A stretch of DNA of 64,000 nucleotides from Selaginella moellendorffii (Eukaryota > Plantae > Lycopodiophyta), in assembly GCF_000143415.4 (NCBI RefSeq), contig NW_003314383.1, positions 62,001-126,000 of the forward strand. The letters run 5' to 3'. Shown piece by piece: positions 12,823 through 59,461 of this stretch. Position 1 is the first letter of the stretch, and every line of letters begins with the position of its first letter. A program made the position numbers and the translations under genes. The notes beneath the pieces are model-generated. The model made no database searches, was not told the origin of the DNA, and saw only the letters and a program-made list of their open reading frames with translations.

Positions 12823-12843
12823 GCGTGGGGCTGCCGAGAGGCG

Positions 12844-34977: not shown

Positions 34978-34998
34978 AGATAAGGTGGTTTCCAATTT

Positions 34999-36849: not shown

Positions 36850-36926
36850 GGCAAGAACTAGGGTTTAAGGGAGGAGCTGCCCTAATTTCCTAATTTAGTG
36901 GATTAAATCTATAGCATTTTTACGTC

Positions 36927-37803
36927 TTAATCTTTCTTCCTGCCTCTAGCTGACTTCTTGCCACTCCTCCGCCTCGCTTTGCCATTGCCCCCCAGAATGC
37001 CGCTGGTGATTGAGTAGCCCGCCACTGCAACCATGGTTCCAGCCACGGCAAGCGCCATGGGATGGCTCCCCAAGAACTGGATGACAAGCCCGTCAAAGAA
37101 ATGCAAGCATAACCACAGGGGCACACCTGCAACGCCTGGGAGTATTTGTGCTGGAACGCTTCCATGAGATCGCCTCCGAGCGCAGCTTCCGGCGGCACCT
37201 CCTCCGCTCTCGTTTCCTTCCATCCTTGCTGCAAGCAGCAGCAACGCAAACGGTTTCCAAGGAGAAACGAAAACTACCACAAACCTTGACAAACTCCGAG
37301 ATGGTTTCGGCGGTCCAGTCGCCCGAGTAGTCAAACATGCGCCTGTCGTGGAACAGCTTGAGCTGTGGCGGGTTCGTGATGGAAAAGCGCTTGCGTGTCT
37401 TGGGACTCTTGGCTACATCCACCTTTGGGAGAGGACGCGACTCGTCTCACGAAACCAACGAAGTTCAACTTACCTTGGCAAAGAGGGGGTGCCCGTCCCT
37501 CGTCTCTTCGAGAAGCTTGCGAAGAGCGAGCTCGGCATCTTTGCCCTCCTCGAAATCCGGATCAGTGAAGAGCACCAGCCTGCACAAGCACGCCCACACT
37601 GCCAAAGGGTTGCTTCCCTGTGCATTTTCTTACCACGATCCAGTCGTCTGCCCGGTTGCTGCTTGTGTGTCGTGCTCGAAATTCCTGTCGCTGAGGTACA
37701 AGAGGTGCGGCCCTTCCACGGCGTCGTCACCAGCGGCAGCGCAAGCGCCCGCCGCCACGAACACCAGTAGCAGCAGCAGCAGCAGCAGCACAGGGCGCTC
37801 CAT
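36927..37803 (-). CDS. Secreted/ER membrane thioredoxin-fold protein lacking CxxC
   Basis: Signal peptide, LSDRNFEHDTQAATGQTTGSWLVLF, FAKVDV...RF.I...PQLKLF...YSG, C-terminal TM and basic tail. Confidence 0.75.
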
Positions 37804-37889
37804 GTCTGGATCAAACAATCAAGAAACGCAAACCCGAGTCGCTTCTCCTTCTGAATATATGAAGAAAAGAGTTTTGTTTGGTGTTTTCT

Positions 37890-40115
37890 TCACACAGGAA
37901 AACTGCCCGTCAGCTTTATGTGCTCGAGCGTTCTCGACAGGCCAAACTGCACCACCGACTGATGCCCTGCTCTGAACCCATCGCCATATGCCGGTGACGA
38001 GTCCATGGCAATCTGGTGGAGAAAGAATTCCTGGAAACGATCGTTGTTGATCGACTTTGGCTTCTGCTTGCCACCTGACGAGCTGCTGCTGCTGCCGCCG
38101 CTACTGCCGATCTGCGACTCGAGCCAAGTGTGTGCCATCACTTGACAAATGCCCTCCTCCACCGCTGGATTCAACTGGTGCGGATAGCCTTCAACAGAGA
38201 GAAGCAAATATGTGTCGAGCCAAGTTCTAGCAACACAAGTTCAGGGAGCTCACCGTTGAGCCGGAGCCAGGCATGCATGAGCTCGTGAGCCAGGATGGAG
38301 CCAGTGAGCAGACTGCAAACATGATCAGAGTCTTTCGTGGCGAGAACTGAAATGTTTCCCCTCACCGTGGAAGGCCGTACAGAACAAGGATAGCGGTGAC
38401 TTCGCACTGGCGTCGGAGCCTGAGTGATTCCTTGCGCATACTGCCCACTGGATTGCTACGTGAAGCCTTTGGCTTTCTGTACACCTGAAGCGCTGCACCA
38501 TCAGAAACTTTCCAGAGGTTGGAGGTTTCGGACTTACTTACAGTGCTAACAGTCTGCTCCTCCGACAGGCAGAGGCCCCTTGTTTCTGGCAAGTGGTGGT
38601 AGCCCTGTGCGCAAGCAACAGAATGAATGCCTGCCTATATACACAGGACGAGCATACAAAAACTTACGTCTCGTTCGTGCTCACGAGCTTCGTTGAGTGC
38701 TTGTCGCTCCACCAGAAGCATCGGTATCGACTGCGAGATCTTCATGTTCATTCCTTCGTAGAAATCCAGAATTTCGTGGTAGAGATGCTGGCACTCGTGC
38801 GTATCCATGACTGCCGAATCTAAGCATTCTAGGCACAGCTTCCGTCCATCGTCCAGGCTCACAAACCGTGCGTCTCGGGCCTGCATGTATGTCACCCCGG
38901 CCGTCAAGCAGTCGACAAGGCAGTAAAAACGGGCCTTACCTCCACTCGCTCACAACTGCAACATCGAGGGGTGGAGTCCTTTTCATGCAAGGGGCAATAC
39001 TTTTGTCCCCAGAAAGGATGTGCGCGGTACTCTATCAGGCCAGAGGAATTCGGTGGAATCTGAATGACTGGAAGTAAATACCATCCGCATATAAAGCTCA
39101 ACAAAACATACAAACTGGTGGCAGACTTCACACTTGGGATGATACAAATCCCTGTAACACTCCTTGTGGTAGCGGTCACTCCCGGACAAGGCAAACTGCA
39201 AGAAACACACGAGGAGCGTGGGTGGAGGGTCATCAAAGTCGAGAAACCTGTGAACCCGATATGGGATCTCCGCATGCTTTGCAGCGGAAGCACTGTGGAT
39301 GCCACACAGAACCGAGACAACTGAGGAAGCGCCCCGGTCCGATCTCCTGGTTGCACCCAGCACATATATATCTGTGCATCAAGGGAGTTGAAGACTACAC
39401 ACATAAACTGGATGGGCTGCCAACCTTTGTTTGCTCGGGCTGGGAGCACTCCTGCTTCTGCTTTGGCTGTCCAAGTCCATGCTCTCTTGCACGGCTCTCG
39501 CAAGCTCCTCCTCGTAGCTCGATCCAAACGGGCCAAATCTTTCTGCAGTGTGGACATTAGAGTGCGAACGCAGGCCACACGGAGTTCTACCGTAGTCATT
39601 ATTGTCTGGCGCAGGAGTGCGACGGTGGTCGTCATCAGTCAGCGCATTCCTGCGTCCATCCTGCGGGGAATGCAAAACAGATTACGGCTCCAAGAGCGAG
39701 GGCGATGGATGGGCAAGGGGAACAACATGCAGGCGCTCGCATTCTTATGTTGCGTGAGGGGCGACGAGGAGAAAGAAACAGAGGAGGAATACCTTAAACA
39801 TTGACGAGAGGAGGGAACGCAAGCGCGAGCGCAGAGACGACAAACCCCCGCTGCTGCTGGGCTGCCGGGTCCTGCTCCTGGGCTGGCGTTTGTCACGCAC
39901 AGCCGGACAAACGAGATCGACACAACCCAAGGCACAGATATATGGATTGCATTGCAAAGCGCCTGGATGACTTACCTGGAGGAAGATTTCGTCGATGGGA
40001 TTGAGGATCGACATGGACTGCCCCATTTTGCAGCTTGGTGCGCCGCCGCTGCTGCTCGTCTCCTTGTCCTCGTTGCCCCTTGGCCGCGGTTTGTCCAGTA
40101 TGAAGGGCGGAGCAT
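37890..40115 (-). CDS. DA1/DAR-like protein (UIM, LIM, zinc peptidase). Start approximate
   Basis: [19 protein letters not shown]...[69 protein letters not shown] and VEEGICQV. Confidence 0.9.
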
Positions 40116-40343
40116 CTCAAGAGGCGCATCATCTTGGGATCCTCTTGAAGCGAGAGTAAGACATCCCTCTTCCTTCACTCCTCTTCTATTCACTCACACA
40201 TCCATGACGCGCACACCCTCTCTCCCAGCAATGACCAAGCCAAAACAAACACATTTGATCTAGGCTAAGCCACCTATATTTTCCTTTTTTTCTTTTCTTT
40301 GTTTGCGATGTATCCATCTATCCATCCCTCTGATAAGTTATAC

Positions 40344-40734
40344 TTAAATCCCTCCGGCCCACGTAGTACGGCTCGGATCACTTGACCTCGCCCTTGTCCT
40401 CCTGCTTTGCCAAAGCGGAGAAACGTCAAAAGATAACAATCGGCATGCACGCTTGCTCGGAATTCTTACAAGCGCCGAGCGAGGGGCAGTAGGCGGAGGC
40501 TGCGACGAGGAGAGCGCAGCCATGGCTTTCTCTTGAGTGTCACTCGACTGGAATGCATCCTCCACAGCCCCCTGTTTCAGCCATCTCTCTCTCGCTCGCA
40601 TTTGGAAAAACTAAACCAGAAAATCAAAACACCACCTTGACGTTTTGCATCTCCTGTGCATTCAGTGTCCGCGGCTCCGTGCCGATTGAGGACTGCCGCC
40701 CCTCCTCCTCGCTCGTCCCCTTCCTCTCGGCCAT
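40344..40734 (-). CDS. Small uncharacterised protein (spliced)
   Basis: MAERKGTSEEEGRQSSIGTEPRTLNAQEMQNVK followed by a GT donor, then GAVEDAFQSSDTQEKAMAALS after an AG acceptor. The 3' end is uncertain. Confidence 0.45.
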
Positions 40735-41004
40735 TTGCCACTGTCGTGCTAATCCCACTCCACCGCTCTGCTTATCAAGGTTGCTAGACGCGTGGCCAAA
40801 GAAGATATATAAACTTGTTTTTCCCAATCAGTACAAAAGCCAACGGCGCTCTCCACGCGTGTTGGCTGGCCGTGTCGATCGATCAATCGTCTATACAAGA
40901 ACAAGAACAGAGTGGAGAATGAAAAATTTTCCTTCAGCGGTATGCACAGTTTCAAGTAAGGTGGAGTTGTGTTGTTGCTGTTGCCGAATAGTGTTGCGCG
41001 GATG

Positions 41005-43054
41005 TTATGTCGCGAGCCAAGGCTGAGATAGACTACAGGCGGGTGTGGATGCGCTTGGCCCCTCGTTTCCATGCACAGCCTTGTGAAGCAGCGCGTACTG
41101 CTCCCTCACTGATTCCCACACACTTTGGTGAGCATCCTCCTGCAAAGGCACAAAAGCCAACGCGTTTGTTCCTTGTCCCAGGAAAAGCAAGGCTCACCTG
41201 TCCAAAATTGACTTCGGAACCAACGGAGAGGCCGACCCCGTGATATCCTACGAGACGTCTCTCTCCGATCGCCTTTTGGACCTGTGCATGGCAATGAAAT
41301 GAGTCCATCGCCCGGACAAACCAGCTCTCTCACCTTGGGCGGAGGCGGCATGATGTTGTAGCTGAGTAGAGCCATCGGATACATGTGTCCTGGAACGTCA
41401 CCGCGCTCAACCAGCCGCCTCATGTTGTCCACGGCCGCCGGGTCGAAAACTGCCTGGAAGTGCGCATGTCACCCAGTCACTAGCCACCACAGAAACAATA
41501 CAAGCTTACTGGAGTCCATTCGTTGGTGACGGGATCGGGGCGATCACGGCCGCCACTAGGCGCAATCCATATTAGCTGCTTCCCGCTCCTACCAATGCTG
41601 GCAATCTGAGAAACGTTGCAAGTTAAGAGGCAGGACAGAGAAACCACCTGAGAAGGACGGCCAGCTCCTTGAGAGCCCGTGTGTTTGCACGTCGCTTCAT
41701 CTCCACAAGCTCAGGGTCGTCGTTGATATGCTTCTTCGAATGAACGCAGATAAGATTCCTGGCGGCAAAACACCGGCACCAGTGTCAACGAAGAAGAGAA
41801 AGAGATCGAACCTTCCCATGCTGAAGGGCTTACAAAACGGGTCCAAGATGACCCTGTCCCCGGCTATGTACGTCTGTCACCGTTGACAGTCACTTGGTCA
41901 GTAGAGCATATAGTCTTGCAAGCTGCGAAGCTCACATCCAGGAAGCAATACCATTCTCTCCGCAAGATAAGGATGCGAGCCCTCCAGAAGCAATGCGATG
42001 ATTGCAGGATCGGCTTCCGTTTGATGGTTCGAGAAAAGAACCACGTTGTGCCCCTGCATTGATGGAGTCGAGAGAAAGATTATAGAGTTGATTGGAAAAC
42101 AAGCAAGGAAAAAGAATGATACCTGTTGCACTTGGTTTTCGATGGCATCCCAGTGCTCCTTGTTACCGAGATATGATTTACTGCTCAGAGACAAGCGGTT
42201 TTACGAATTTTCTCTGTTGCCAACGCCAGCACCACCTTACCCGAAGTGAAGCAAGGGACGGATGTACTCCTGGCCAAACTTGTAGTAATCAAAAGGCTCC
42301 CTCATGCTTTGATGGTATGGAGGGAATGTGAAGGGATCCTGCAAGTGCGCACAACCTTATCCATGTTATAAAAGGCAAGCGAGCTAGGAACAAGTTCACC
42401 CGTAGCTACCTCGAATTGCAACAGGATTCGGTCAAGAACAGTTGCCATGATCGGTACCACCGATTTGTGTGCCGTCTCGGACTCGCTGTGTAGCACCTGA
42501 CAAAGAGAAGCATGAACTTGGAGGATATAACTCGAGTGTTCTTACCGCATCCCGGTAGTTTGCGTAAAAGTCCTTCATGCCCTCCCCGGCATGAGGAGGC
42601 AGCCTTCCCGCCGCCACTTCCTTGTCGATGCCAAGCAGCAATTCTGCGACCAAGGATAGGGTTTGAGAGTGGCAACAGTGAGCCAGCCAGCCAGTCGAAG
42701 TTCACCTTGTTCCGAGCCAACGCCCTGGAAGACGGACGAGTGCTCGTGCTGCTCCTCGTGGCACGAGGACGCCGCCGAGTGGTCATTGGTGGTGGCGGCA
42801 GCAGCAGCGGCGGCGGCAGCGGTGGTGGCAACGTCGTCTACTGCCCATTGCGCCGCGGCAGCCTCCACCATCTCGGCAATGGCGCCCCTCCCTCGACGCC
42901 GGGGCGACGGCCGCTCCTCCATGATGCTCCACGAAACTCGGCTGCTAACTCCGCCGCGCACACGTGGAAGCGCCACGCCACAGATTCGCGGAACTGGGAA
43001 GCACGACAGCGGCACACTGACGCTCACCCCTCCTCCGCTCCTCCCAGCCGCCAT
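41005..43054 (-). CDS. ATS1: Plastid glycerol-3-phosphate acyltransferase (ATS1), multi-exon
   Basis: Transit peptide, [26 protein letters not shown] (HxxxxD), [22 protein letters not shown] and [16 protein letters not shown]. Confidence 0.95.
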
Positions 43055-43274
43055 AAACCAAACCAAACCCAACCCAACCCAACCCTCTTGCGCGCGCGCT
43101 CGGGAAAGAGATTGCGTGTGTGCTCTTGCCTTCTTCCTTGCCTACCACTACCTAAACATGCCACCCCTGGTGGACTAGCCTATGCACCTTTACTAAACGC
43201 ATTCATTCCAAACATCCAATATGTACACACGCAGCTAGACGATAGACACAAACACACAGGCCAACACACATCTT

Positions 43275-46200
43275 CTAGGACCTCCTGCTGCTGTACGTGA
43301 TACCATATCCAAGCGCAGCCACCACGAACACCCACGCAGTGAGCAGCGCCGCCGCCGCCGCCAGCAGCAGCAGCGCCGAGAAATTCATCTCTGGTGCCTG
43401 CGAATTCGGCGACAGCGTAAAAGCACGTAATCCCAGCTGCTTGCTGGCCAGAGTTATCGCCTGTAGCACAGCAGACTGCTTGTAACACAGGTTTCGGTCT
43501 GCACGCATCAGAGCATACTCGACCATGTCCAGCGTCGTCATGTCCGCAACCAAGTCTTGGTCGCGCTTTTCCATGTATCTGCCGGTGTAGCCTGCCATGT
43601 TAGGCACCAGGTCAGGATAATAGGATAAGGAAAGGGCCCTACAATAAAGTGATCACCCCTTTAGCCAGTTGGCTTAGGGTGTAAGGGATAGGATCCTAAC
43701 ATTGGTATCAGAGAATTGGTTGCGATGGCCGACCAAGCTGAACGCTGGAATCCTATCATCGATGGTGGTGCCGACGGTGGTGCCGACGATGGTGTCAACG
43801 AAGCTGCGGAGATTTGGACCATTCAAGATGTGGTTCATGAGCTGCGAGCCCTTAATAAAAATCAGCAAGAGATGCAAGACGAGATGCATGGCATGATGGA
43901 TACCATGCGTGGGCGTGTTGAGGCACTCGAGGCTGGACGGGGTAGCGCTCCAAGTAAGCCTTCTTTGGTAGATCGACTCAAGATTCCAACCTTTTCCGGT
44001 GATGGTGGTGTGGACGAGTGTCTCGCTTGGCTAGCCAATGTGAAGAAGTTCTTGGCTGCTAGAGGAACTCCAGATGCAGAGGCTTTAGTGGCTATTCCGA
44101 TGGTTTTGCGTGATGCGGGTCTTCGATGGTGGAATTGGCTTGAGGAGTCCCGTGTTGCGGATAAGAAACCACCAGTGTCTACCATGGATGAGTTTGAGGC
44201 TGCTTTCCGTTTACGTTTTGCCCCTCATTACGACGTGGAGAATGCTCGTACAGAACTTCGCCATTTTCAGCAAGGGAAAATGACGCTCGGGGATTATATT
44301 GAGAAGCTTACTCGCTTGATTAGTCGTGTTCCAACGAAGGATCCAGATCAGAACAAATCCTACTTCATTGATGGCCTCCATAGTGAGAGTATGCGGCAAC
44401 ACTTGCGTCATTCTCAGCCTACAAAGAGTTTGGAGGAGCTCTTTGATGCGGCTCGTCGCCTTGACAATGACAAGCACAAGTCTCGCAAGCGTTCGCGGAG
44501 TCCTTCTGTCGAGAATCGTCGTGATGATCGCCGTGGACACAAGGATGGGAACAAGCATCACAAGTTGAAGTCGGTGGTGACTACTTCAGATGCAAAGGGG
44601 TCCAAGAAGCAGAAGTTCTTTGTGAAGAATTATAGACAGGGTTGTCATCATTGCGGCGAACTTGGACACTACAAGGCTGATTGTCCGCAGTTGAAGAACA
44701 AGCAGCAGGACAAGAAGAATGGCCAATCATCTTCTCACGGTAAGTCAGATACTAAAAAGTTGCAAGCTTTACAGCGTGAGGATGACGAGAACGACCATTC
44801 CGGTCGGAGGAAGAGACTTTCGATCGTTGCTCGTCAACTCAACTGTGTGTGGAACAAGATGGAGCTTGAGGATACGCGTGAATCAGCTTTAATGCTGGAG
44901 GGCGTGTTCCGTGGCGATCCAGTGCGGATTTTACTGGATAGTGGGAGCGATGACAACTTTGTTTCGGCAAAGTTTGTTGCGGAGCATCGCCTGAACACAC
45001 GTGGAGTTGTTCCATACACAGTGGAAGGTGCAGCTACCTCTGCTCAGCATTTCGATGCTTGTGTCGAGGGGCTGGAAGTGTTGGTTGGCAAAACCACACT
45101 TGTGGAGACTTTTTATCTCGCGGATATCCATCGTGTGGATCTCATTCTTGGGATGCCATGGTTGGTGAAGGTGGATCCCGAGATAAAGTGGAGCATTAAG
45201 CGTATCTCGCTGGAGTATGGTGGCGTTAAAGATGTGTGGTTTGGCGAGGGCGTTCAACCACCAGTTGTTATGCTCTCTGCTACATCTTTGAAGCGGGCTT
45301 GTCGTAATGGAAAAGCACTTTCAAGTTACTTGCTGTTTGTTCGTGACTTGGGGGACCAAGGCACGTGTGGGGGAGAAGCAGCAGTACGGGATGTACTTGA
45401 TGAGTTTTCTGATGTTTTTCCATCTGAACTTCCTCATGGATTGCCTCCATTACGAGGTGTGGAGCATGGGATTACATTGGAGCCGGGGACGCGGCCAATT
45501 TACCGGCGTCCATTTCGGTTAAGTTATGCGGAGGAGCAAGAAGTTCAACGACAAGTCAAGGAGTTACTTGAGTTTGGATTTATTCAGCCAAGTAAGTCTC
45601 CGTTTGGTGCTCCGGTCTTGCTTGTGAAGAAGAAGGACGGTTCAATGCGGATGTGTATTGACTACCGTGCTTTAAACAAGAAGACAGTGAAGGACAAGAT
45701 GCCGATGCCACGTGTGGATGATATCCTAGACAAGCTTGGTGAAGCACGAGTGTTTACCAAGATTGATCTGAGGAGTGGATATCATCAGATTGCAATGGAT
45801 GATGCATCTATCTCCAAGACGGCATTCAACACAAGCTTCGGACATTTTGAGTTTACCGTTATGCCGTTTGGTTTGACGAATGCACCGGCCACATTTACTC
45901 GGTTGATGACGGAGGTATTTGGGCGTTATCTTCATGAGTTTGTGGAGATTTTCTTGGATGATATTCTTGTTTTTAGCAAGAATATGGAGGAGCATAGGGT
46001 GCATTTGCGCAAGGTTCTTTTGTTACTTCGAGACAGCAAACTTTATGCGAAGAAGAGCAAATGTGAATTTGCAAAGTCGGAGGTGGAATATCTAGGCCAT
46101 ATTGTGACATCTAAGGGTGTCAAGACGGATCCAAGGAAGGTGGCTGTGGTGGAAAACTGGCCTACACCGACTACAGTGGCCGAGTTGCACAGTTTTCTTG

Positions 46201-48504
46201 GTATGGCTAGTTACTATCGACGTTTCCAGCATAAGTTTGCAGAGGTGGCTATTCCGTTGACGCGGTTGTTACGCAAGAATGTGCCATTCGAGTGGAAGAC
46301 GCCACAAGAGGAGAGTTTTGTGGCGCTGAAACGATTGTTGATCGAGGCTCCAGTGCTTCGCATTGCTGATCCATCGAAACCTTACGAGGTGACATGCGAT
46401 GCGAGTGGTTATGCACTGGGAGGAGTTCTCATGCAAGAGGGACAGCCTATTGCATATGAGAGTCGAACTTTGAATTCCGCAGAGCAACGCTATTCCACAT
46501 ATGAGCAAGAGTTACTCTCTATTGTTCATGCTTTGCGGACGTGGCGGCACTATCTTTATGGTGCAGTGTTCGTGGTGTTGACAGATCACAAACCACTTGT
46601 GTATCTTTTCACACAGAAGGAGTTGAACACTAGGCAAGCTCGTTGGATGGTCAAACTCATGGAGTTTGGGGAGTTTCCTATTGAGCATCGTCCGGGAAAA
46701 TCAAATGTGGTGGCGGATGCTTTATCTCGTGTTCGTCATGTGATGACGTTACGAACACGATTTTGTCATCATTTGAGTAAGGTGGTCAGCGAGTTTGGGC
46801 AGTTGGTTGAGCATGCTCAGGCTCAGGATGCTGAGGTGGCCTCTTTGCGAGACCAGATGGAAGCTCCTTTCTCATTGGTGGATGGGATTCTCTACTACAA
46901 TGGCCGTGTCTATTTGCCACGGGTGGATGCGTTAATTACTCAAGTTTTATTCCACTATCATGATCGTCCAGAGGCCGGTCATTTTGGGGGGAAGAAGACG
47001 TATGAGTTGATTAAGCGCAACTTTTATTGGAGGAATATGAAGGCTGATATCCTCAAGTATTGTAAATCATGCGAGCTTTGTCAGCGGGTTAAGGTGCCAC
47101 GGGAGAAGCCGGGGGGACTTTTGCAACCTTTACCTATTCCTCAGAGCCGTTGGTGTAGTATCTCTATGGACTTCATCACTTGTTTGCCACGAACACAGAG
47201 GCAAAAGGAGCAAGTATGGGTCATAGTGGATCGGTTGACGAAGTATGTGCGGTTGTTGGCTCTTCGGAAGACTGTCACTGCCTCAGACTTGGCTGCGGTT
47301 TACTTGGAGAAGGAGTTGAACACTATCCCTTACACCCTAAGCCAACTGGCTAAAGGGGTGATCACTTGATTGTAGGGCCCTTTCCTTATCCTATTATCCT
47401 GACCTGGTGCTTAACATGCCAACACATCAGGTCAGCAAGCTCACAGAACCTTTTTCAGGAGAGCACCTGGTATGTCAAATATCTGGTTTGCGGCAGAGAC
47501 GCCCAGAATCTCCCCGAGATGAAACCGTGCAGCGATTCGGTCCTCGACGGACAGCTCGTCACCGTGAGTCATTACCACGACAGGTCTATCGTCTGCGCAG
47601 CTCGAGAGACGAGAGAATGAGCACTCCTTCCTCCTATAACATCGTCAAGTACCTTTGAATGTGAGGAAAGAACTCTTGTAGATCTTGGCAAGAGGAGAGC
47701 GGTGCGTTGCTCCCGCCCCCGCCCTTCTCTCTCTGTGGACGGCCACAGCGCTCACCACAAAGATGACAAAGTGAACTTGCCTGGTAGCGCTGTGCAAGTG
47801 ATGGCCGTGCCGGGCTCTCACGAACAGCGAATCAACGTCAGGGCCCGCGGACCTGCATGTCTCATGCATGAGACCAAAACGTCGCTCTTCTTCTCTACCT
47901 CTGCACGATCCCTCCATGCTTGACGCCGTTCTTCATCCAATCGCGCACCATGCTCAGGTCCTCGTCGGTGTCCACCTCCGAGAAACCCCGAGTGTCAAAG
48001 ACGCAGATGTTCTTCACCGCGTTGCACAGCATGTACTCCCTGAGGAAGAGAGTTCCATTCTCGCTCGGATCGCCTGGCACACAGTCAGACACGAGTTCTA
48101 GCTGCTGCTGCTGCTGGATCACTCACCGCACACTTGAGCTCTGTCGAAGCCCGCATTCATGTCGTTGACCACCCTGATCATGTTGTTGATGAGTGTGCTC
48201 TTTCCCGCACCCATCGGCCCAACCACGAGAAGCGTCGTCACCTCTGGCACCGCGAAGCTCTTGGCCTCGAAGCCCCCAGTCTCGGCAATCCATCTCCCCG
48301 GCCGATAGCTGCAATCAATCACGGTGAGCGTGTGCGCAAGCTATGGATGGTATCACGGTACCTTTGGATGCTCTCCCTGCGCTCCTGGATGTTCGCAGCC
48401 CTCCTGACGGCGGACTCGTTCTGGTGGTGGACGAGGCGGGAAAGCTTGTCCAGATGCCGCTCTTCCTCCATGTCCGAATCCAAGAGCCCCCCGCCCATGA
48501 CCAT
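43275..48504 (-). CDS. P-loop NTPase family protein with C-terminal TM. The last intron (47466-43592) contains the retroelement
   Basis: LLVVGPMGAGKSTLIN, CVFDTRGF, VIFVVSA, PVVVMTHGDELS and IFDIP|GYTG...LDMVEYALMRADRNL. The phase-1 junction across the element is consistent. Confidence 0.82.
43593..47421 (+). mobile_element. Ty3/gypsy retrotransposon, 3'-truncated, bounded by inverted LTR copies. TSD TGCCA at 43593-43597 and 47417-47421
   Basis: 104-bp LTR at 43598-43701 (TGTTAG...CTAACA), PBS TGGTATCAGAG at 43703-43713, gag-pol ORF, and a reverse-complement LTR copy at 47323-47416. Confidence 0.93.
43725..47369 (+). CDS. Gag-Pol polyprotein, uninterrupted but with integrase truncated. Reads into the inverted LTR
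   Basis: Zn knuckle CHHCGELGHYKADC, protease LLDSGS, RT RMCIDYRALN/FLDD, RNase H CDASG, integrase HHCC and SMDFI. It ends before the second D and the E of the DDE triad. Confidence 0.93.
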   Translation: MADQAERWNPIIDGGADGGADDGVNEAAEIWTIQDVVHELRALNKNQQEMQDEMHGMMDTMRGRVEALEAGRGSAPSKPSLVDRLKIPTFSGDGGVDECLAWLANVKKFLAARGTPDAEALVAIPMVLRDAGLRWWNWLEESRVADKKPPVSTMDEFEAAFRLRFAPHYDVENARTELRHFQQGKMTLGDYIEKLTRLISRVPTKDPDQNKSYFIDGLHSESMRQHLRHSQPTKSLEELFDAARRLDNDKHKSRKRSRSPSVENRRDDRRGHKDGNKHHKLKSVVTTSDAKGSKKQKFFVKNYRQGCHHCGELGHYKADCPQLKNKQQDKKNGQSSSHGKSDTKKLQALQREDDENDHSGRRKRLSIVARQLNCVWNKMELEDTRESALMLEGVFRGDPVRILLDSGSDDNFVSAKFVAEHRLNTRGVVPYTVEGAATSAQHFDACVEGLEVLVGKTTLVETFYLADIHRVDLILGMPWLVKVDPEIKWSIKRISLEYGGVKDVWFGEGVQPPVVMLSATSLKRACRNGKALSSYLLFVRDLGDQGTCGGEAAVRDVLDEFSDVFPSELPHGLPPLRGVEHGITLEPGTRPIYRRPFRLSYAEEQEVQRQVKELLEFGFIQPSKSPFGAPVLLVKKKDGSMRMCIDYRALNKKTVKDKMPMPRVDDILDKLGEARVFTKIDLRSGYHQIAMDDASISKTAFNTSFGHFEFTVMPFGLTNAPATFTRLMTEVFGRYLHEFVEIFLDDILVFSKNMEEHRVHLRKVLLLLRDSKLYAKKSKCEFAKSEVEYLGHIVTSKGVKTDPRKVAVVENWPTPTTVAELHSFLGMASYYRRFQHKFAEVAIPLTRLLRKNVPFEWKTPQEESFVALKRLLIEAPVLRIADPSKPYEVTCDASGYALGGVLMQEGQPIAYESRTLNSAEQRYSTYEQELLSIVHALRTWRHYLYGAVFVVLTDHKPLVYLFTQKELNTRQARWMVKLMEFGEFPIEHRPGKSNVVADALSRVRHVMTLRTRFCHHLSKVVSEFGQLVEHAQAQDAEVASLRDQMEAPFSLVDGILYYNGRVYLPRVDALITQVLFHYHDRPEAGHFGGKKTYELIKRNFYWRNMKADILKYCKSCELCQRVKVPREKPGGLLQPLPIPQSRWCSISMDFITCLPRTQRQKEQVWVIVDRLTKYVRLLALRKTVTASDLAAVYLEKELNTIPYTLSQLAKGVIT

Positions 48505-48543
48505 GACAACGCAACCCTAGCTCGAAGCTCTAGGGTTTATGAG

Positions 48544-49525
48544 ATGAAGCTCGTGAGCATCAAGAGCTTGGCCAACGCGCACGGCGATGGAGTGTGGGCG
48601 GTGGCGTGGGCAGCAGCAACCGGCGATCGTCCAGCAGTGCTGCTCACGGGGTCGGCGGACGAGAGCGTCAAGGTGTGGAAGGGCGACGAGCTGGAGCTGG
48701 AGCGGACCAACAGCGGCAACTCGCTAGGTGTGGTGGCGGTGGCGGCGAGCCCAGATGGGAGGGTGGCGGCATGCACGTCCCTGGACAGTGTGGTGCGCAT
48801 CTTCGACGTGGACTCCAACAGCACGCTGGCGACGCTGGAGAGCAAGCCCGCCGAGGCGTGGCAAATGCAGTTCCATCCCAAGGTGAGGGAGGCGTGGGCA
48901 TTTAGCGATGGGCATTTTCATGGATTGGTGTGGCACCCAGGGGGAGCTGCTGGCGGTGGCTGGCGGAGGGAGCGGCTGCGTCAACATCTGGAAGGCGAGC
49001 AGCGGGAGCCGGGAGACGAGCCTCAAGGCGGAGAGCGTGGACAAGGTCGGGGGTGGCAAGTTCGTGCTGTCGGTTGCATGGAGCCCGGATGGCAAGCTGC
49101 TGGCGTGCAGCTCCATGGACGGCACCATCGCCGTGTTCGACGTGGCCCGGGGCAAGATGCTGCACACGCTCGACGGCCACTCGATGCCGGTGCGCTGCCT
49201 CGCCTTCTCGCCGGTGGAGCCGCGCTACCTCTTCACCGCCTGCGACGACAAGCACGTCCACATGTATGATGCCGAGGGGCGGAGCCTGGTGAGCGCCATG
49301 TCGGGCCACGCGAGCTGGGTGCTGAGCGTGGCGGGGAGCCCAGACGGCGCCGCGCTCGCCTCCGCCTCGAGCGACCGGACGGTCCGCCTCTGGGACCTCA
49401 AGACGAGGAGCTGCGTTCAGAGCCTGACGGAGCACAAAGATCAGGTGTGGGGCGTTGCCTTCCGCCCCGGCAGGCTGGCCACCGTCGCGGACGACCGGAG
49501 CATTTGCCTCTACGACTACGCCTGA
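48544..49525 (+). CDS. VIP3: WD40 protein VIP3/SKI8/WDR61 (intron 48882-48940)
   Basis: MKLVSIKSLANAHGDGVWAVAW, KFVLSVAWSPDG, GHSMPVR, GHASWVLSV and HKDQVWGV. Confidence 0.93.
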
Positions 49526-50244
49526 CGTGGAGTATACCGTGGAGACATGGAGGACGGGACGGGGCGGCGCGGACGAGAGAGGAGACTGTCTCAAAGCAAC
49601 ACAAAATGGCAAACTAGACATTTTAAGTGGCATATGAGTCATGAGCACAAGGAACAGTGGGCATTACAGGGAGGCTCTGCCACATTGCACATGCCTCCTC
49701 TTATTCTTGTCCCGCCATCTATTCATCACATTACACTTCCTATGGTATATATGTATGTATGTATACGCATTTGCCTCTTTTGGTTGGTTGGTTGTTTTGT
49801 TGCGTTGCTTGCTTGCCTCCTTTCCAAATGCCTCTTTTTAAGCCCCCCCTTTGGTCTTGGCTTTGGTCCTTGCCTAGCGGCAACTGGCAAACAAAGAAAA
49901 GACCCAACCAAAACGCTCAAACACCCCCAATTCCAGAGCCAGCTCAACCACAGCTATCTCAAGCTTAGCCAAGGGTCATAGGTAGCTACACCCACCACCA
50001 AAACATCTCATCCCATTTCATATCTCATCTCATCTCAGCTCAGCTATGATTCTATGTAAGACATGGTTTTAGCACTAAGGTGGTGTTGGTGTTGTTTAGC
50101 CTAGGTAGAACGTGAGTGTGAGTGTGTGTGTGGGGCGGGGGCACGGTGGCGTTTGTTTTTCTCTCTCACGAGTCATCACACTGCCCAGGACTGGCTGGAC
50201 CTCTGCGCTGAGCCCTGCCGAGCGCTGTGCCTGGAATACGAGTG

Positions 50245-50328
50245 TGAGAGAGAGAGAGAGAGAGGGCGGATTCGTTGACTGGGGAGTGAGAGTTTGACGA
50301 GGAGAGAGAGAGAGAGAGAGAGAGAGAG
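50245..50328 (+). repeat. (GA)n microsatellites in the GSK3 5' region. Similar tracts at ~31417-31442 and ~34030-34047
   Basis: Visible GA dinucleotide runs. Confidence 0.9.
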
Positions 50329-50413
50329 GTGTGTCGAGGGAGGCGATGGCGCGGCGCGAGGAGATTGAGGAGGAGAAGGAGAATGGGGGCAGCCATTTGT
50401 TGCGGCCACGGAT

Positions 50414-52635
50414 ATGATGCAGCGGCTGAGGAACTTAGCGTCTGGTTGGTCCTCCACGGCTGACACGGTAAGCCCCAAATCCGCCATTTACCCCCTTCCT
50501 AGCAAGCGCCACCACCAGCGCCATTCCAGCCACTGATTCGTTGCTCCTCTTGCCATGGCAGCAGCTTGGTGGAGCTGGTACCAAGAGGGCAAAGGTAGAA
50601 CAAGGCGAGGAGCAAGGCATGGCGTCCTCGGTTAGCGCGGCCGGCTTGATAGCGAATCCCAGAGCTGCCACCGTCAACAGCAACGTTGTGGACCAGCTCC
50701 CGGACGAGATGCACGAGATGAAGATCAGGGATGACAAGGCCGCCACACACATTGATGAAAAGGTTTTGTAGATTGGCAATAACGCTCTCTCATTTCTGGT
50801 GATACTTATGGAAAGTCGGGTTGATTCGATGCAGGAGGTGGAGGCGGCGGTGATTGACGGCAATGGTACCGAGACCGGACACATCATTGCCACCACAATA
50901 GGAGGTCGGAATGGCCAACCTAAACAGGTTTGCGCTCCTCCCTTTCTCCTACATTCACCTCTCTTTCCTCACTCGTCTTTCTATCTTCTTCTTGTGTGGC
51001 AGACAATCAGCTATGTCGCGGAACGGGTTGTGGGAACGGGCTCCTTTGGAATCGTTTTCCAGGTATTGCTAGTCCAAACAGTGCAACAAAAGCAGGCTTT
51101 ATCGTTTCTTCTTTCTCTTTGGGAATGCAGGCCAAGTGCTTGGAAACCGGAGAAACCGTGGCTATCAAAAAGGTCCTCCAAGACAAGCGGTACAAGAACC
51201 GAGAGCTCCAGATAATGCGCCTCCTCGACCACCCCAGCATTGTCTCCCTCAAGCACTGCTTCTTTTCCACCACCGATAAAGACGAGCTCTACCTCAACCT
51301 CGTCCTCGAGTACGTGCCCGAGACCGTCTACCGGATTGCAAAGCACTACAACAGGATGAACCAACGCATGCCGCTGCTGTACGTGAAGCTCTACACCTAC
51401 CAGGTAACCACACACCCCGCAACAATGAAAGTAGAGACAAGAAATGTGGTTGGCATGGGACTGACATTTGTGTTCACGGAATCTAGATCTGCAGAGCATT
51501 GACGTACATTCACGGTGGCATGGGTGTCTGTCATCGAGACATTAAGCCGCAAAATCTTCTGGTAAACCCTCCTTGTGCTTTCGAGTCCTGGAATTCTTAT
51601 GCTTTTCTTTTGCTGGATTTCATCAGGTAAATCCACACACACACCAGCTCAAGCTCTGTGACTTTGGGAGTGCTAAAGTCTTGGTGGGTGCTTACAAATA
51701 GGATCCTTGGAATTCAGCAGCTGATTTGCGTTTCCTGCTTTTCCTGGCAAAACAACAGGTGAAGGGAGAGCCCAACATATCGTATATCTGTTCCCGTTAC
51801 TACCGTGCTCCGGAACTTATATTTGGTGCAACTGACTACACAACAGCCATCGACATCTGGTCGACTGGATGCGTTCTGGCTGAGTTACTTCTTGGTCAGG
51901 TTGTATACCTCGTCCTTGCAACTCTTCCATTATGCCACTCACCGTCTCATCAATCATTTCCACTGTGCAGCCTTTGTTCCCAGGAGAGAGCGGCGTGGAT
52001 CAGCTAGTGGAGATTATAAAGGTACGCATGCATTCTTGCTCTTTTTTTTCTGTTTTTTTTGCGAGTCGCTCTTGCTCAAGACTTGCTTTTGCAGGTCTTA
52101 GGTACTCCTACTCGCGAGGAAATCAAATGCATGAATCCAAACTACACGGAGTTTAAGTTCCCTCAGATTAAAGCGCATCCCTGGCACAAGGTAAGAGCAA
52201 TCATCCGGTATATCTCTCTCTCTGTCTCTCTTGATGTGGCTCGTTGACAGGTTTTCCACAAGCGGATGCCTCCTGAAGCAGTGGACTTGGTGTCGAGGCT
52301 GCTTCAGTATTCCCCCAGCCTCCGATGCAATGCCGTAAGTTGTCGCGTTCTCGTTGAGCGCTGGTTCATTTATCTTTAAATTTTTCACAGCTGGAGGCAC
52401 TTGTCCATCCGTTTTTTGATGAGCTCCGAGACCCGAGCACAAGGCTACCCAATGGACGACCGTTGCCAGCCTTGTTCAACTTCAAACCACTTGGTAAATT
52501 GTTGTTGTGTGTCCCAAATTCTCCTGTGACTGAATGCTACTTAACGATCCAGAGTTGAAGGGCGCATCGCAAGAACTGCTTGAACGACTCATACCCGAAC
52601 ACGCGAGAAAGCAGGTTCCTTTTCTAGCGCTGTAG
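50414..52635 (+). CDS. GSK3/Shaggy-like kinase, multi-exon
   Basis: [44 protein letters not shown] and TREE. The N-terminal exon [11 protein letters not shown]...KRAK resembles group III plant GSK3s. An alternative ATG lies at 50619. Confidence 0.95.
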
Positions 52636-52937
52636 GCCTCGACGATCTGACAAGCAAGCCCTCTTATTTTTCTCGTTAACCTCTCTGGTATGATCTTTGT
52701 ATGTGTACTATGCTGATGCTACAACACTACTACGTACGACGACTGCTTCCCCTAGGTACAATACAATAGAGAGAACTGTGAGTGAGTGTGAGGGAGTAAA
52801 GAGATTACTACTATTATGAGTTACTTTCCAATAGGTTGCTAAGCAGAAGCTTGTCAACGAACGATTCGCATGAGATGTATGTTTATACAGAAAGAAGGGT
52901 GTGGCTTTTCGACAAAAAATTGCGACAAAGTTGCTGG

Positions 52938-54138
52938 CTAAGAATTGATTGCCCGGCAGTTTTTCCGAATCTGGCCATCCGAGCCAGTCTTCACCTGGAC
53001 CTGTCCCAGTCGCACCATAGCCAGCTGGAAGTTTGCAGAGAAGCTGTTTGCGTTTTGAGCAAAGGCGTTCACCAGCGGCTTTGTCCTTGGATCAGTAAAC
53101 AGCGCCTGGTCCGACGACATGAGGCCCTTCCCCGCCTGCAAGTTGACGAAGTAGGCATTGTCGAAGATGGTGTTGCTCAATACATCCAGGGGCAGCAGCT
53201 TGGTGGCGTCTGGACTGGGAGACGGGCAGCTCGACTCCAACATCTTTCCAAACGTTGGATCCAGCGTCGGATCGCTTCCGTTGGCACTAAAGCGATTCAT
53301 GATCGCTCCACAGTGCGCAAAACCAATGGTATGAGCGCCTACACAGATTAGTGAACACAACTGAGAACATCCACCAAGTCGCGTTTGCTCACCTGAAAGA
53401 ACCACCAGGTCCGACTGAGACAGACCCTTGGCGCTGAAAGATGCTGTCGACTGGTCCACGTTAAAGGATGGATCTGGTAAGTTGGAGGCGACGACGGAAG
53501 CCTGTGAAACAAGACCGTCTCTCCGTCCAGTTGGAACGTCCCAGTGCGGCCCTCCAGACTAGCAAAAAAGAACAGAGATAGAGCAGTCAATCAATGCACT
53601 GCGCTCTGCCCGTGGCCAGTAAACAAAAGAGCAAAGAGGCTATCAACTTACAAAGAATATGGCATCCCTGGCCGCCAATGCTACTACATCTGCGCATGAC
53701 ACAGTTCCGGGGCACACAGCTTCCAGCGTGTTCTTGGCGGCATCAATCACCTCGTAGCCACCCACGGTTGCGCTCGCCCGGCTATCTTTCTCCGCAGTGT
53801 TGTTTGGAGTTGAGTCGAGCAAGATTGAGGCGTCACACCCCTGTGGCACAAAACGCAGGCATGAGTAGCGACATCAGATGCAGCTCGAGCTCTAGCTTCA
53901 AACTTACTTGCACGAAGCAGTCGTGGAAGAAGAGCCGAACTAGACGCGATGCGAGCGGGCGATTACTTTGGATCGCCATCATCACGGATTGTTGCACAAT
54001 GCTCTCGGCTCTCGGGCAGGAGCTGTCATAGAATCCAACGAGCAGCTGCGCTTGAATGCATACAGCAGAGAGTTGGAGAACCAGGACGAAAAGAGGCTCC
54101 AGCATTCTTGAGCTTGGCGCGCGCAGGCGAGGCGGCAT
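52938..54138 (-). CDS. Class III peroxidase
   Basis: RLFFHDCFVQGCDASILLD, VSCADVVALAARD, GAHTIG and FDNAYF. Three introns. Confidence 0.96.
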
Positions 54139-54640
54139 TGTGCCGTGTAGGAGATTACTACGACAGGGTTGTGGAAGGTTTTAGCACCTGAAGCCCATGA
54201 CAGAAGTAGTGCCGCGTTTTCGCCACATAAGTCCAAGCCGCAGCTGCATAGTGTGAGCGAGTAAAGTCGAGAACCCAAGCACTGACTGTCTCTCTCTGCA
54301 ACAAAACAACAAGAGGAGAGAAAATCGGTGAGTTGAATTGAGAAGCCAAACACTGGTATATCATACTCGCCCGACCACAAATTCTTGTAACGACCGAATT
54401 GCATTGAATGCCGCATTCGCCATCACACTTGCTCGTTCTTCTTCCTTCCCAGCCTGTAGAAAAGAAAGACAGAAAATAAAAAGAAAAGAGAAAACAAGGC
54501 CGCCAGCTGCTGATGTGTTTCGGCACGGCAAGCACCGTGCTCTTTCACCCATTATAACTCCGCGTACCTTAATTTCTGGCTGTCAGCCATGGTAGCGTAG
54601 TGTTTGTAGACGCAGTATCATCTTGTTTTCGTGATAGATT

Positions 54641-56738
54641 TCACAGACCAATAGCATCCAGGAGCTGCGTGTGCTTATCTACAGATACCAGAGAGTTTGC
54701 AGTGAGCATGCCACTGGCAGCTACAGCAGGAACTCCGATTCCTGGAAACACCGAGTCTCCGCAGCAAAAAAGATTCTTGATTGGAGTCTCGGGACCAGGG
54801 AACGTGTCCTTGCCTGCTCGGATAGCAGGTCCATAAGTACCACGATGCCTGCGTAAGAAACGCTCGTGTGTCAATGGTGTCCCGACGAGCTTCACATCGC
54901 AGCTGTCTGCTGAGAATCCGGTCCCGAGCGCTCGCTGCACAGCTTTCCACATGACCTGAACAAAGCAACCAGTCAAGGAAATCACGAACGAGAAAAGAAA
55001 GACGAACCTGAGACCGTTCTTCTTTGAGCTGTTTGTATGCAGCAGACTGGCGATCAAGGCCTTTCCAGAGGTGATAAGGCTCCGTTCCTGGCGTGTATGC
55101 GTGCAGGACGTGCTTTCCAGGGGGTGCGAGATTGGGACTGAGAGCACTTGGCATGGAAATCAAAACAACATTTTGTGGTGCGTCCACCCCTTGCTCCCAG
55201 CTATCAACCACTATATGATGGATTCCAAGATCAGCAGGTAGGTCCTAAATGGTTAGCTGATAGATAGTACTTTGTTCCTGGAGAAAGAGAAATGCCCACC
55301 TTTGCTTCCACACCGAGATGCAAGTGCATAAAGGAATCGCACTGTGGAGTTTCAGTTGCACGCTTTTGATATTCTTGTGGAACCTCCTTTGGAGGGAGCA
55401 ACGCCACCGTATTCCATATTGACGCATTGCTTATGACCGCTTTGCGTGCAACAACAACCTGCATTATATGGAAGGATCAGGATCTGTGGCTTGACATCTT
55501 TCGAGTACCTGGCCATTTCTCAGCTTTACCCCCTTCGCACGGCCATTTTCAACCAGAATTTGCTCAACATGACACCCCAAGGAAAGCTGTCCGTTGTGTT
55601 TCTCGAGGCCGCGTACAAGAGCGTCGATAATTGCCTCAGTCCCTCCATGAGGATACTCCAGCATGCATCCAGGCTTATACCATTCGGAAAACATGTAGAC
55701 CTGTTTGTACGAGTTCAAAGTTAGACAAGTAGCTCAACTGACGACAAGAAGCGAGCTCACCACTTCGGCGGCAAGTGTGCCATCAGCCTTAAGGCCCGAA
55801 AGAAGGAAAGGCAGCAAATCCAGCCAGTTGCGAAGGAAAGGATCCTTAATCTCCAGTGCGTCGAGAATCTCCGAAAAAGGTCCCAGAAGCCTCGGCGCAT
55901 TCAAAGCTCCTTTGAATCCCATTCGCATGAAGGATGAGATGAGCTGTGGGGAATAACGTCCCAGAACGGTAAAAAGAGCGCCCCAGTCACCTCGAAGAGC
56001 TGCTGGTGGCAGGGCCATGGCAGCTTCAGAGAGTCCCAGCACAGTTTCCTGAATTTTGATCAAGTGTCAGTCAGTGGCAAGTGAGTTTCTCAACACTTCA
56101 CTTGAAGTCTCTTCCATTCTGCTACAGCATTCGAGCCACCATACTTTTCCAACACCTGGTACACAGATACTAACAGACGGAGAGTTATTTTCCAGAGCAA
56201 AAGCTTGCAAGCTTGTGCAAATACTTAGTACCTGTGGAAAATGGGATGGACCAATCTCGGACAAGAAGCTGCCTTGCGGAAGATGAACCATCCAGGAATC
56301 ATACTTTGCGCACTCGACACGCTCACCCAAGGCATCCAGTACCTGGAGAAGATACAACAAAGTTAGTTTATAGCTCGTAGTATATGATACTTTGACCTGA
56401 GCAAGGGGATTGGCTTGAGGACCCTTGGACGAGAGACCCGAGAAGAGCGAAGGCCCCGAATCGAAACGATAGCCTCCGATTTGGAAGGAATGCGCGGCTC
56501 CTCCAGCAAGGGTATGACTCTCCAGGACGACGACGTCTTCGCCATACCTGGCAAGCAAGCCGCCACAGCTCAAGCCGCCAATCCCACTCCCAATCACCAC
56601 ATAATCCGCCCCCGCCTTGCCTGGAAATCAAATGTAGGCGTAGGAGGAGCGAGCAAGCGAGCATTTCTCCAGCTTACCTCTGAGGCCCTTTCGATCGATG
56701 GTGTGAACGACGCTCGGGGCTGAGACGAGGCTGGCCAT
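54641..56738 (-). CDS. CRTISO-like FAD-dependent oxidoreductase (carotenoid isomerase family). Start approximate
   Basis: VIGSGIGGL (Rossmann), FDSGPSLFSG, SFMHLHLG, GTPLTHERFL and CGDSVFPGIGVPAVAASG. Confidence 0.9.
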
Positions 56739-56853
56739 CCAATCCAAATGCCCTAAACTCCCATCTAAGAAAGAGATCATGCTTGTGGAATACAATATAG
56801 CGATGCCTTGTGTGCACTACCTATCATCAGGAATCACTGGTCGACTGATCCCA

Positions 56854-58239: not shown

Positions 58240-59461
<1,222 letters not shown>

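What the first reader, a model, noticed from the sequence alone, without database searches (positions are those of the whole stretch)
43593..47421. LTR retrotransposon integrated with INVERTED LTRs and a perfect TSD
Seen: the left LTR is 43598-43701. The right end, 47323-47416, is the reverse complement of 43598-43691 (2 mismatches in 94 bp). Both outer ends are therefore the LTR 5' (U3) end. An identical TGCCA flanks both sides, integrase is truncated and there is no PPT. Known: gypsy elements have direct LTRs, and integrase makes a 5-bp TSD. Inference: one concerted integration used two U3 ends. Either two cDNA molecules each donated an end and their inner ends were then joined by host repair, or a rearranged cDNA was integrated. 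If more copies exist, this would be a propagating inverted-terminus derivative.
Basis: partly seen in the sequence, partly recalled or inferred. Interest (0 to 1): 0.82.

Follow-up and report, generated by a model that had tools for sequence, protein, structure and literature searches.

The report
Retrotransposon inserted by two U3 ends
One haplotype of the spikemoss Selaginella moellendorffii carries a young Ty3/gypsy retrotransposon whose second LTR is a backwards, shortened copy of the first. The other haplotype has the untouched site with a single TGCCA, so a mis-made DNA copy was inserted in one step by two identical (U3) ends, a rare and dead-end replication accident.

Summary
A 104-bp LTR (43598-43701) is followed by a tRNA-iMet-type primer binding site and one intact 1217-codon ORF (gag, protease, RT, RNase H, integrase zinc domain). 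The ORF breaks off early in the integrase core at 47322. It is joined there to an inverted copy of LTR nt 1-94 (47323-47416, 2 mismatches). TGCCA lies on both sides.

The window is scaffold GL377687.1 of S. moellendorffii. The allelic scaffold GL377679.1 is collinear at 98.4-98.9% identity and carries the empty site with one TGCCA and no host DNA missing.

So this is one integrase-type insertion with two U3 termini, and it is hemizygous. How the head-to-head joint formed is inferred. I favour a plus-strand switch, or an end joining, onto a second plus-strand strong-stop DNA. An intact ORF combined with 2 LTR mismatches hints that the two LTR copies came from different templates.

The copy has no PPT, no direct 3' R and no complete integrase, so it cannot propagate. 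I could not reach any other copy of the family. I found no natural precedent in the papers searched. The scan has noted four other like-end insertions elsewhere in this genome; I did not check them.

The parts
43593..43597 (.). left copy of the 5-bp target site duplication, TGCCA
   Evidence: a single TGCCA at the empty allele, L002 8955-8959
43598..43701 (+). 5' LTR, 104 bp, TGTTAGG...CCTAACA (7-bp terminal inverted repeat). The outer end is the U3 terminus.
   Evidence: The 3' boundary is inferred from the CA and the adjacent primer binding site.
43703..43713 (+). primer binding site TGGTATCAGAG, 1 nt after the LTR. It is complementary to the 3' end of plant initiator tRNA-Met (from my own knowledge of plant LTR elements).
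   Evidence: Use of tRNA-iMet by plant LTR elements is stated in PMC7197481.
43716..47369 (+). single intact ORF of 1217 codons (first ATG at 43725). Domains: gag 44097-44381, CCHC 44640-44690, protease 44883-45215, RT 45624-46106, RNase H 46293-46667, integrase zinc domain 46929-47096. The last 15 codons and the stop are read from the inverted LTR.
47139..47322 (+). N-terminal stump of the integrase catalytic core. It has the first two acidic residues (MDF, VDRL) and is cut about 30 residues after the second, before the catalytic E.
   Evidence: no rve (PF00665) hit, whereas homologues have it
47306..47315 (+). 10-nt polypurine run GGAGAAGGAG, ending 7 nt before the junction. It may be a central PPT, that is, a plus-strand discontinuity (inference only).
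   Evidence: one of 9 purine runs of 9 nt or more in the element; post hoc p about 0.05
47323..47416 (-). inverted copy of LTR nt 1-94, lacking the last 10 nt of U5 (GATCCTAACA). Its U3 terminus faces outward to the right. It has 2 mismatches to the 5' LTR.
47417..47421 (.). right copy of the target site duplication, TGCCA

Best explanation
This is a single integrase-mediated insertion of an aberrant reverse-transcription product that had a U3 terminus at both ends.

Shown: the element is a Ty3/gypsy copy. Its left part (5' LTR, primer binding site, gag-pol up to the start of the integrase core) is joined head to head to a 94-nt piece of LTR lacking the last 10 nt of U5. Both outer tips are the LTR 5' end. 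The last 7 bp of that end are the same as those of a normal U5 end (CCTAACA), because the LTR has a 7-bp terminal inverted repeat. The insertion duplicated one TGCCA. The allelic chromosome still has the empty site.

Inferred: the integrase came from the virus-like particle of an intact parent, since this copy's own integrase gene is broken. It treated the two U3 tips as a normal pair of ends and made the usual 5-bp staggered insertion.

Inferred, with roughly 40% of my belief: the joint was made during reverse transcription. The growing plus strand stopped at a discontinuity just past an internal purine run in the integrase gene. It then switched onto a second plus-strand strong-stop DNA, probably from the co-packaged second genome, and copied it to its 5' end. 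That 5' end is by definition the U3 terminus.

The copy was dead on arrival. It has no PPT, no direct 3' R for the first strand transfer and no complete integrase.
For: Structure.

Empty allele: the window is GL377687.1. The allelic scaffold GL377679.1 (L002) aligns 1-8959 to window 34636-43597 and 8955-21072 to window 47417-59540. The 5 shared bases are one TGCCA, and gene order is the same on both scaffolds.

Integrase needs little more than the end dinucleotides. Ty1 integrase inserts any TG...CA fragment in vivo with a 5-bp duplication (PMC2939329). Aberrant cDNAs are known to be integrated with a normal duplication, as in the three-LTR complexes of PMC1950507. Plant elements have central PPT discontinuities and many rearranged cDNA forms inside particles (PMC7197481).

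Two templates: if the two LTR copies had been identical at insertion, the joint probability of a still-intact 1217-codon ORF and 2 or more LTR mismatches is at most 0.015 using the local indel rate. It is at most 0.14 counting stop codons only.

Leads only: the scan's earlier notes list four more like-end insertions in this genome. One has an inverted LTR plus a 42-nt tRNA copy, which is the signature of a strong-stop DNA (I did not check them).
Against: No canonical copy of the family could be fetched. The integrase sequence beyond the break is therefore unknown, and microhomology at the joint cannot be read. The visible joint shows none (43692 is g, but 47322 is a, not c).

The purine run near the joint is a post hoc observation (p about 0.05). 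The two-template argument rests on a neutral model and a local indel ratio.

The sequence cannot tell a switch during reverse transcription from end joining of two cDNA pieces. It also cannot tell either from two molecules sharing one intasome. There is only one assembly and no read-level check.
Confidence: 0.78

Rival explanations
1. Two separate cDNA molecules, or a cDNA and a short LTR duplex, each gave one U3 end to a single intasome. After the concerted strand transfer, the chromosome was held together only by host end joining of the two inner ends. One inner end was broken in the integrase gene, the other 10 nt short of the U5 end.
For: It gives the same final structure. No microhomology is visible at the joint, which fits blunt end joining. 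The 2 LTR mismatches with an intact ORF fit two molecules. Concerted integration from two donor molecules is the standard in vitro assay (my own knowledge).
Against: It needs a chromosome break to be repaired without loss. Intasomes normally synapse the two ends of one cDNA. Nothing in the sequence separates this from the favoured model.
Confidence: 0.2
2. Post-integration rearrangement. A canonical element inserted normally at TGCCA. Later a fold-back replication error (MMBIR type) copied the 5' LTR backwards from a break in the integrase gene. It then switched back into the end of the 3' LTR through the 9-nt identity CCTAACATG, which is shared by the inverted U3 end plus left flank and by the U5 end plus right flank.
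For: The 7-bp terminal inverted repeat plus the near-palindromic TGCCA gives 9 identical nt (11 of 12) at the two places. Such a switch would therefore leave no scar and would keep the duplication and the empty allele as observed.
Against: It needs two template switches, the first with no visible homology. It predicts that the two LTR copies were identical when made, which fits poorly with 2 mismatches and an intact ORF. It cannot explain the chimeras of two different families noted elsewhere in this genome (not checked by me).
Confidence: 0.05
3. Double insertion. Two copies of the family inserted independently and in opposite orientation into the very same 5-bp target. A deletion of roughly 6 kb (my estimate, assuming canonical copies of about 5.3 kb) then removed everything from the first copy's integrase to 10 nt inside the second copy's 5' LTR.
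For: The empty allele would also show one TGCCA. Inverted tandems of LTR elements at one palindromic target are reported in Drosophila (PMC5932611). It allows the two LTR copies to differ.
Against: It needs two hits on one 5-bp site in a genome of about 100 Mb (genome size from my own knowledge). It also needs a deletion whose right end falls within the last 104 bp of the second copy. All of this would have happened on one haplotype while the first copy's ORF stayed intact.
Confidence: 0.03
4. Assembly artefact. A chimeric clone or a false join in the Sanger assembly created the inverted end.
For: There is only one assembly and no reads were available to me. No independent contig with this ORF tail was found in the protein collection.
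Against: The 94-bp inverted piece is shorter than a read. Both of its junctions would therefore lie in single reads. A chimera would not end exactly at the LTR tip next to a correct 5-bp duplication that matches the empty allele.
Confidence: 0.03
5. A separate kind of element that normally has inverted terminal repeats (DIRS-like, or a propagating inverted-terminus derivative).
For: It has inverted ends and an intact long ORF.
Against: It has an integrase zinc domain and the stump of a DDE core, not a tyrosine recombinase. It has a 5-bp duplication, which DIRS elements do not make. The right repeat is a truncated copy of the left one, fused in frame into a broken integrase gene. There is no PPT and no direct R. 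No second copy is known.
Confidence: 0.02

Closest known systems
Canonical plant Ty3/gypsy (Metaviridae) LTR retrotransposon
   Same: gag with CCHC knuckle; pol order protease-RT-RNase H-integrase; TG...CA LTR; tRNA-iMet-type primer binding site; 5-bp target duplication.
   Different: The second LTR is inverted and lacks 10 nt of U5. The integrase is cut after its second catalytic D. There is no PPT. The best protein relatives are only 47-60% identical.
Complex three-LTR insertions made by template switching during reverse transcription (Sabot and Schulman 2007, PMC1950507)
   Same: An abnormal cDNA, made by a wrong template choice, is inserted by integrase in one event and carries one normal 5-bp duplication.
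   Different: Those products keep all LTRs direct and have a normal U3/U5 pair of ends. Here the polarity is inverted and both ends are U3.
Like-end or minimal-end integration by retroelement integrases in experiments (Ty1 integrase inserting any TG...CA fragment in vivo, PMC2939329; U3-only artificial Ty1 transposons and two-donor concerted integration assays, from my own knowledge)
   Same: Integrase needs only the terminal bases. Two ends of the same kind give a normal staggered insertion with a 5-bp duplication.
   Different: Those are engineered substrates. This is a natural germ-line insertion that is still polymorphic between the two haplotypes of one plant.
Autointegration inversion circles of retroviruses, Ty1 and Arabidopsis SISYPHUS (PMC7197481; Garfinkel 2006, cited there)
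   Same: They contain the order LTR, internal part, inverted LTR.
   Different: In those circles the inner junction is the exact U5 tip and the product is a circle with no free U3 ends. Here the inner junction is 10 nt short of the U5 tip and the product was inserted as a linear DNA. I rejected this as the origin.
DIRS-like retrotransposons with inverted terminal repeats
   Same: Inverted terminal repeats around an RT-bearing element.
   Different: DIRS elements use a tyrosine recombinase and make no target duplication. Here there is a DDE-type integrase remnant and a verified 5-bp duplication.

Membership tests
Ty3/gypsy LTR retrotransposon | pol domain order protease, RT, RNase H, integrase, with gag upstream | tested here: met
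   Pfam hits in that order along one ORF: Retrotrans_gag, zf-CCHC, RVP_2, RVT_1, RT_RNaseH, Integrase_H2C2
Ty3/gypsy LTR retrotransposon | two LTRs in direct orientation | tested here: not met
   The only second copy of the LTR is inverted and covers nt 1-94. This copy is an aberrant product of the family, not a canonical member.
Ty3/gypsy LTR retrotransposon | primer binding site next to the 5' LTR | tested here: met
   TGGTATCAGAG at 43703-43713. The match to the tRNA-iMet 3' end is from my own knowledge; there is no tRNA gene in the window to compare.
Ty3/gypsy LTR retrotransposon | polypurine tract directly upstream of the 3' LTR | tested here: not met
   The ORF runs straight into the inverted LTR. 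The purine run at 47306-47315 lies inside the integrase coding sequence.
Ty3/gypsy LTR retrotransposon | complete DDE integrase core | tested here: not met
   No rve hit. The alignment to homologues ends about 30 residues after the second D.
Ty3/gypsy LTR retrotransposon | short target site duplication made on insertion | tested here: met
   TGCCA on both sides and a single TGCCA at the empty allele
Like-end (U3-U3) integration product | both outer termini are the same LTR end | tested here: met
   The right terminus is the reverse complement of the left one, 92 of 94 nt
Like-end (U3-U3) integration product | one insertion event: empty site with one copy of the target and no host DNA lost | tested here: met
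   L002 1-8959 and 8955-21072 abut on window 43597 and 47417
Like-end (U3-U3) integration product | the joint was made before or during integration, not by a later rearrangement | tested here: inconclusive
   Only indirect evidence: 2 LTR mismatches with an intact ORF argue against a copy of the resident LTR
DIRS-like element | tyrosine recombinase instead of DDE integrase, and no target duplication | tested here: not met
   Integrase_H2C2 and a DDE stump; a verified 5-bp duplication

The most novel reading that the evidence does not exclude
Like-end insertions could be a regular by-product of gypsy replication in Selaginella. This hemizygous copy could also act on its family. Transcripts starting in its 5' LTR would read into the inverted LTR piece and fold into a hairpin of LTR sequence. 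That hairpin could seed small RNAs and silence all relatives, much as the inverted Mu killer locus silences MuDR in maize (comparison from my own knowledge).
Probability: 0.05. Interest if true: 0.7.

Novelty: new variant of a known kind. Interest (0 to 1): 0.5.

Why it matters
Test-tube work has long shown that retroelement integrases can pair two ends of the same kind. I found no report of a natural germ-line insertion made that way.

In this case the filled and the empty allele sit in the same sequenced plant. The single-event origin and the 5-bp duplication are therefore verified rather than assumed.

The copy preserves a failed replication intermediate. It could show where plus-strand synthesis breaks in a plant gypsy element and what integrase will accept in vivo.

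It is also a caution for annotation. LTR finders that require direct LTRs will miss such copies or call them truncated. Dating by LTR divergence would also be wrong here, because the two LTR copies probably came from different templates.

The insertion stretches a 1.6-kb divergent promoter region between a GPAT gene and VIP3/SKI8 to 5.4 kb on one haplotype, which could be tested for allele-specific expression.

Tried and rejected
Two insertions at different sites plus loss of the host DNA between them: rejected by the empty allele.

Autointegration inversion circle: rejected. Its inner junction would be the exact U5 tip, and it has no free ends.

DIRS-like element: rejected.

Host ORF restored across the empty site: I joined the flanks only inside a script, to look for an ORF. 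None spans the site. The site is intergenic, 543 bp upstream of the GPAT coding start and 1033 bp upstream of the VIP3 coding start. I did not send the joined sequence to any search tool.

Search for a canonical family copy or a second inverted copy:
- The whole ORF against the protein collection gave best partial identities of about 47-55%.
- The last 218 residues gave at best 60%: P0244, from a 1.9-kb Logan contig that itself lacks the integrase core.
- There is no other copy in the window or in the allelic 21 kb.
- Look-ups in the scan's notes by sequence and by relatives were blank, which means nothing.
- The tools cannot search Selaginella genomic DNA.

Literature search for a natural U3-U3 or inverted-LTR insertion: no direct hit.

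A tRNA gene to check the primer binding site: none in the window.

Full report
**What is in the sequence**

The repeat finder reports one long inverted pair: 43593-43691 against 47323-47421, 99 nt at 97%. Five of those bases on each side are the flanking TGCCA, which is nearly its own reverse complement. The element part is LTR nt 1-94, with two mismatches at LTR positions 6 (G/A) and 49 (A/C). A 33-nt probe from the LTR start matches only these two places in the 64-kb window, with none expected by chance.

The left repeat starts with TGTTAGG and ends with CCTAACA at 43701. After one base comes TGGTATCAGAG. I recognise this, from my own knowledge, as the usual plant primer binding site for initiator tRNA-Met. 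Use of that tRNA by plant elements is stated in PMC7197481. The LTR is therefore 104 bp. Its 3' boundary rests on the CA and the primer binding site, because the inverted copy stops 10 nt short (GATCCTAACA is missing).

**Coding content**

A single ORF of 1217 codons runs from 43716 (first ATG at 43725) to a stop at 47367-47369 inside the inverted repeat. Pfam places the following along it, in order:
- Retrotrans_gag
- a CCHC knuckle
- a retroviral-type protease
- RVT_1
- the RT-linked RNase H
- the integrase zinc-binding domain

There is no integrase core (rve) hit. Alignment to relatives shows that the core begins (MDF..., VDRL...) and is cut about 30 residues after the second catalytic aspartate, before the glutamate. 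The last 15 codons are read from the inverted LTR.

There is no spacer and no polypurine tract before the right repeat. The joint reads ...GGAGAAGGAGTTGAACA | CTATCCC... (47322 | 47323). No homology is visible across it.

This is a Ty3/gypsy element whose 3' quarter has been replaced by a backwards, slightly shortened copy of its own kind of LTR.

**Where the window comes from, and the empty site**

Earlier notes of this scan named Selaginella moellendorffii. I tested that. The WD40 gene just downstream is the S. moellendorffii VIP3/SKI8 protein. The locus fetched for it is 100% identical to window 38454-59525, which places the window at GL377687.1:62001-126000 of GCA_000143415.2.

That protein's 90% cluster holds a second allele on another scaffold. 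Fetching it gave 21 kb of GL377679.1 with the same gene order: DA1-like, GPAT, VIP3, kinase, peroxidases. It aligns in two blocks:
- L002 1-8959 to window 34636-43597, at 98.9%
- L002 8955-21072 to window 47417-59540, at 98.4%

The five bases shared by the two blocks are a single TGCCA. Nothing of the element is present on that scaffold.

The other haplotype carries the empty site, the 5-bp duplication is real, and no host DNA is missing. The insertion is hemizygous in the sequenced plant. It lies in a 1.58-kb divergent intergenic region, 543 bp upstream of the GPAT coding start and 1033 bp upstream of the VIP3 coding start.

**What this excludes, and what it does not**

Two insertions at different places, followed by deletion of the DNA between them, are excluded.

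A misassembly is very unlikely. The 94-bp piece is shorter than a Sanger read, and it ends exactly at the LTR tip beside a duplication that matches the empty allele.

A DIRS-like element is excluded by the integrase remnant and the duplication.

An autointegration inversion circle has the same order (LTR, interior, inverted LTR; PMC7197481). However, its inner junction is the exact U5 tip and it has no free ends, so it does not fit.

Two rivals survive the empty-site test.

The first is a double insertion into the same five bases in opposite orientation, followed by a deletion of about 6 kb (my estimate, assuming canonical copies of about 5.3 kb). The double-insertion step is the kind of event described for Drosophila inverted tandems in PMC5932611. 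It needs a second hit on one 5-bp site. It also needs a deletion ending within the last 104 bp of the second copy. I give it about 3%.

The second is a post-integration fold-back replication error. It would return to the 3' LTR through the 9-nt identity CCTAACATG, which the terminal inverted repeat and the near-palindromic target happen to create. It needs two switches, and it predicts that the two LTR copies were identical when made. I give it about 5%.

**A hint that the two LTR copies had different templates**

Suppose the copies had been identical at insertion. Then the two mismatches must have arisen since, while 3651 coding bases avoided every stop codon and frameshift.

For this ORF, 3.9% of substitutions make a stop. 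The local indel-to-substitution ratio between the two haplotypes is 0.18. With these values, the joint probability of an intact ORF and at least two LTR mismatches is at most 0.015, whatever the age. It is at most 0.14 if indels are ignored.

This is suggestive, not decisive. It favours models in which the inverted piece was copied from, or was part of, a second and slightly different family member. It argues against a fold-back on one molecule and against a later copy of the resident LTR. It also implies that other copies of the family exist or existed.

**How it most likely happened**

Shown: one insertion, two U3 tips, and a normal 5-bp duplication.

Established knowledge: integrases of this class need little more than the terminal bases. 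Ty1 integrase inserts any TG...CA fragment in yeast cells with a 5-bp duplication (PMC2939329). Here the last 7 bp of a U3 tip and of a U5 tip are identical anyway. Abnormal cDNAs made by wrong template choice are known to be integrated with normal duplications (PMC1950507).

Inferred: the proteins came from an intact parent's particle, because this copy's integrase gene is broken.

Inferred, about 40%: the head-to-head joint was made during reverse transcription. The left part is what a growing plus strand looks like: LTR, primer binding site, gag-pol, stopping in the integrase gene. It ends 7 nt past a 10-nt purine run. Central purine tracts are where plus strands are discontinuous in Ty1, HIV and Arabidopsis EVADE. 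If that 3' end switched onto a second plus-strand strong-stop DNA and copied it to its 5' end, the product would end exactly at a U3 tip.

The scan's note on another locus is consistent with this picture. It describes an inverted LTR followed by a 42-nt copy of the primer tRNA. I did not verify that note.

Two other routes cannot be separated from this by sequence: end joining of two cDNA pieces before integration, and two molecules sharing one intasome with host repair of the inner ends.

**Can it propagate?**

Almost certainly not. There is no polypurine tract, no direct 3' R for the first strand transfer, no polyadenylation signal in the right orientation at the 3' end, and no complete integrase.

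I could not find any second copy. Protein searches reached only 47-60% relatives. However, none of the tools can search Selaginella genomic DNA, so this is not evidence of absence.

**Novelty**

In six full-text searches I found no description of a natural LTR-retrotransposon insertion with inverted LTRs and a single duplication. The library lacks most older subscription papers.

The scan itself has noted four further like-end insertions in this genome: three U3-U3 and one U5-U5. The phenomenon may therefore be recurrent here. Those notes are unchecked leads.

The present case is the one with a verified empty allele. I rate it a new variant of a known kind. To a specialist it is a neat natural confirmation rather than a surprise.

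Noticed in passing
window 47895-48322, minus strand: Two adjacent ORFs between the insertion and VIP3 encode a Walker-A P-loop (GPMGAGKSTLIN...) followed by a ...FDTRGF... stretch. They have only sub-threshold P-loop Pfam hits. No gene is annotated here on either haplotype. This may be an unannotated small NTPase gene or a pseudogene.
   Followed up: partly
window 4721-6629, plus strand: A second, unrelated Ty3/gypsy pol remnant (35-45% identical at protein level to the element studied). It lies in the AT-rich first 12 kb of the window (GC 0.30-0.47, against 0.50-0.63 in most of the rest).
   Followed up: no
L003 (Logan SRR20718588 contig, 1935 bp), gene 493-1593: This is the closest protein relative found (60% identity over the integrase zinc domain). 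It also lacks the integrase core: homology stops at ...EQVWV, just before the second catalytic D, and resumes in the C-terminal SH3-like domain. The source organism is not known.
   Followed up: no
window 43593-47421 against L002 8955-8959: The insertion enlarges the divergent GPAT / VIP3 intergenic region from 1.58 kb to 5.4 kb on one haplotype only. This is a natural case for testing allele-specific expression. The two haplotypes differ by about 1% in substitutions, with 0.18 indels per substitution, over these 21 kb.
   Followed up: partly
window 43646 and 47368: One of the two LTR mismatches changes the only AATAAA of the LTR to AATCAA in the inverted copy. The other (43603 / 47411) lies inside the 7-bp terminal inverted repeat that integrase would contact.
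   Followed up: no
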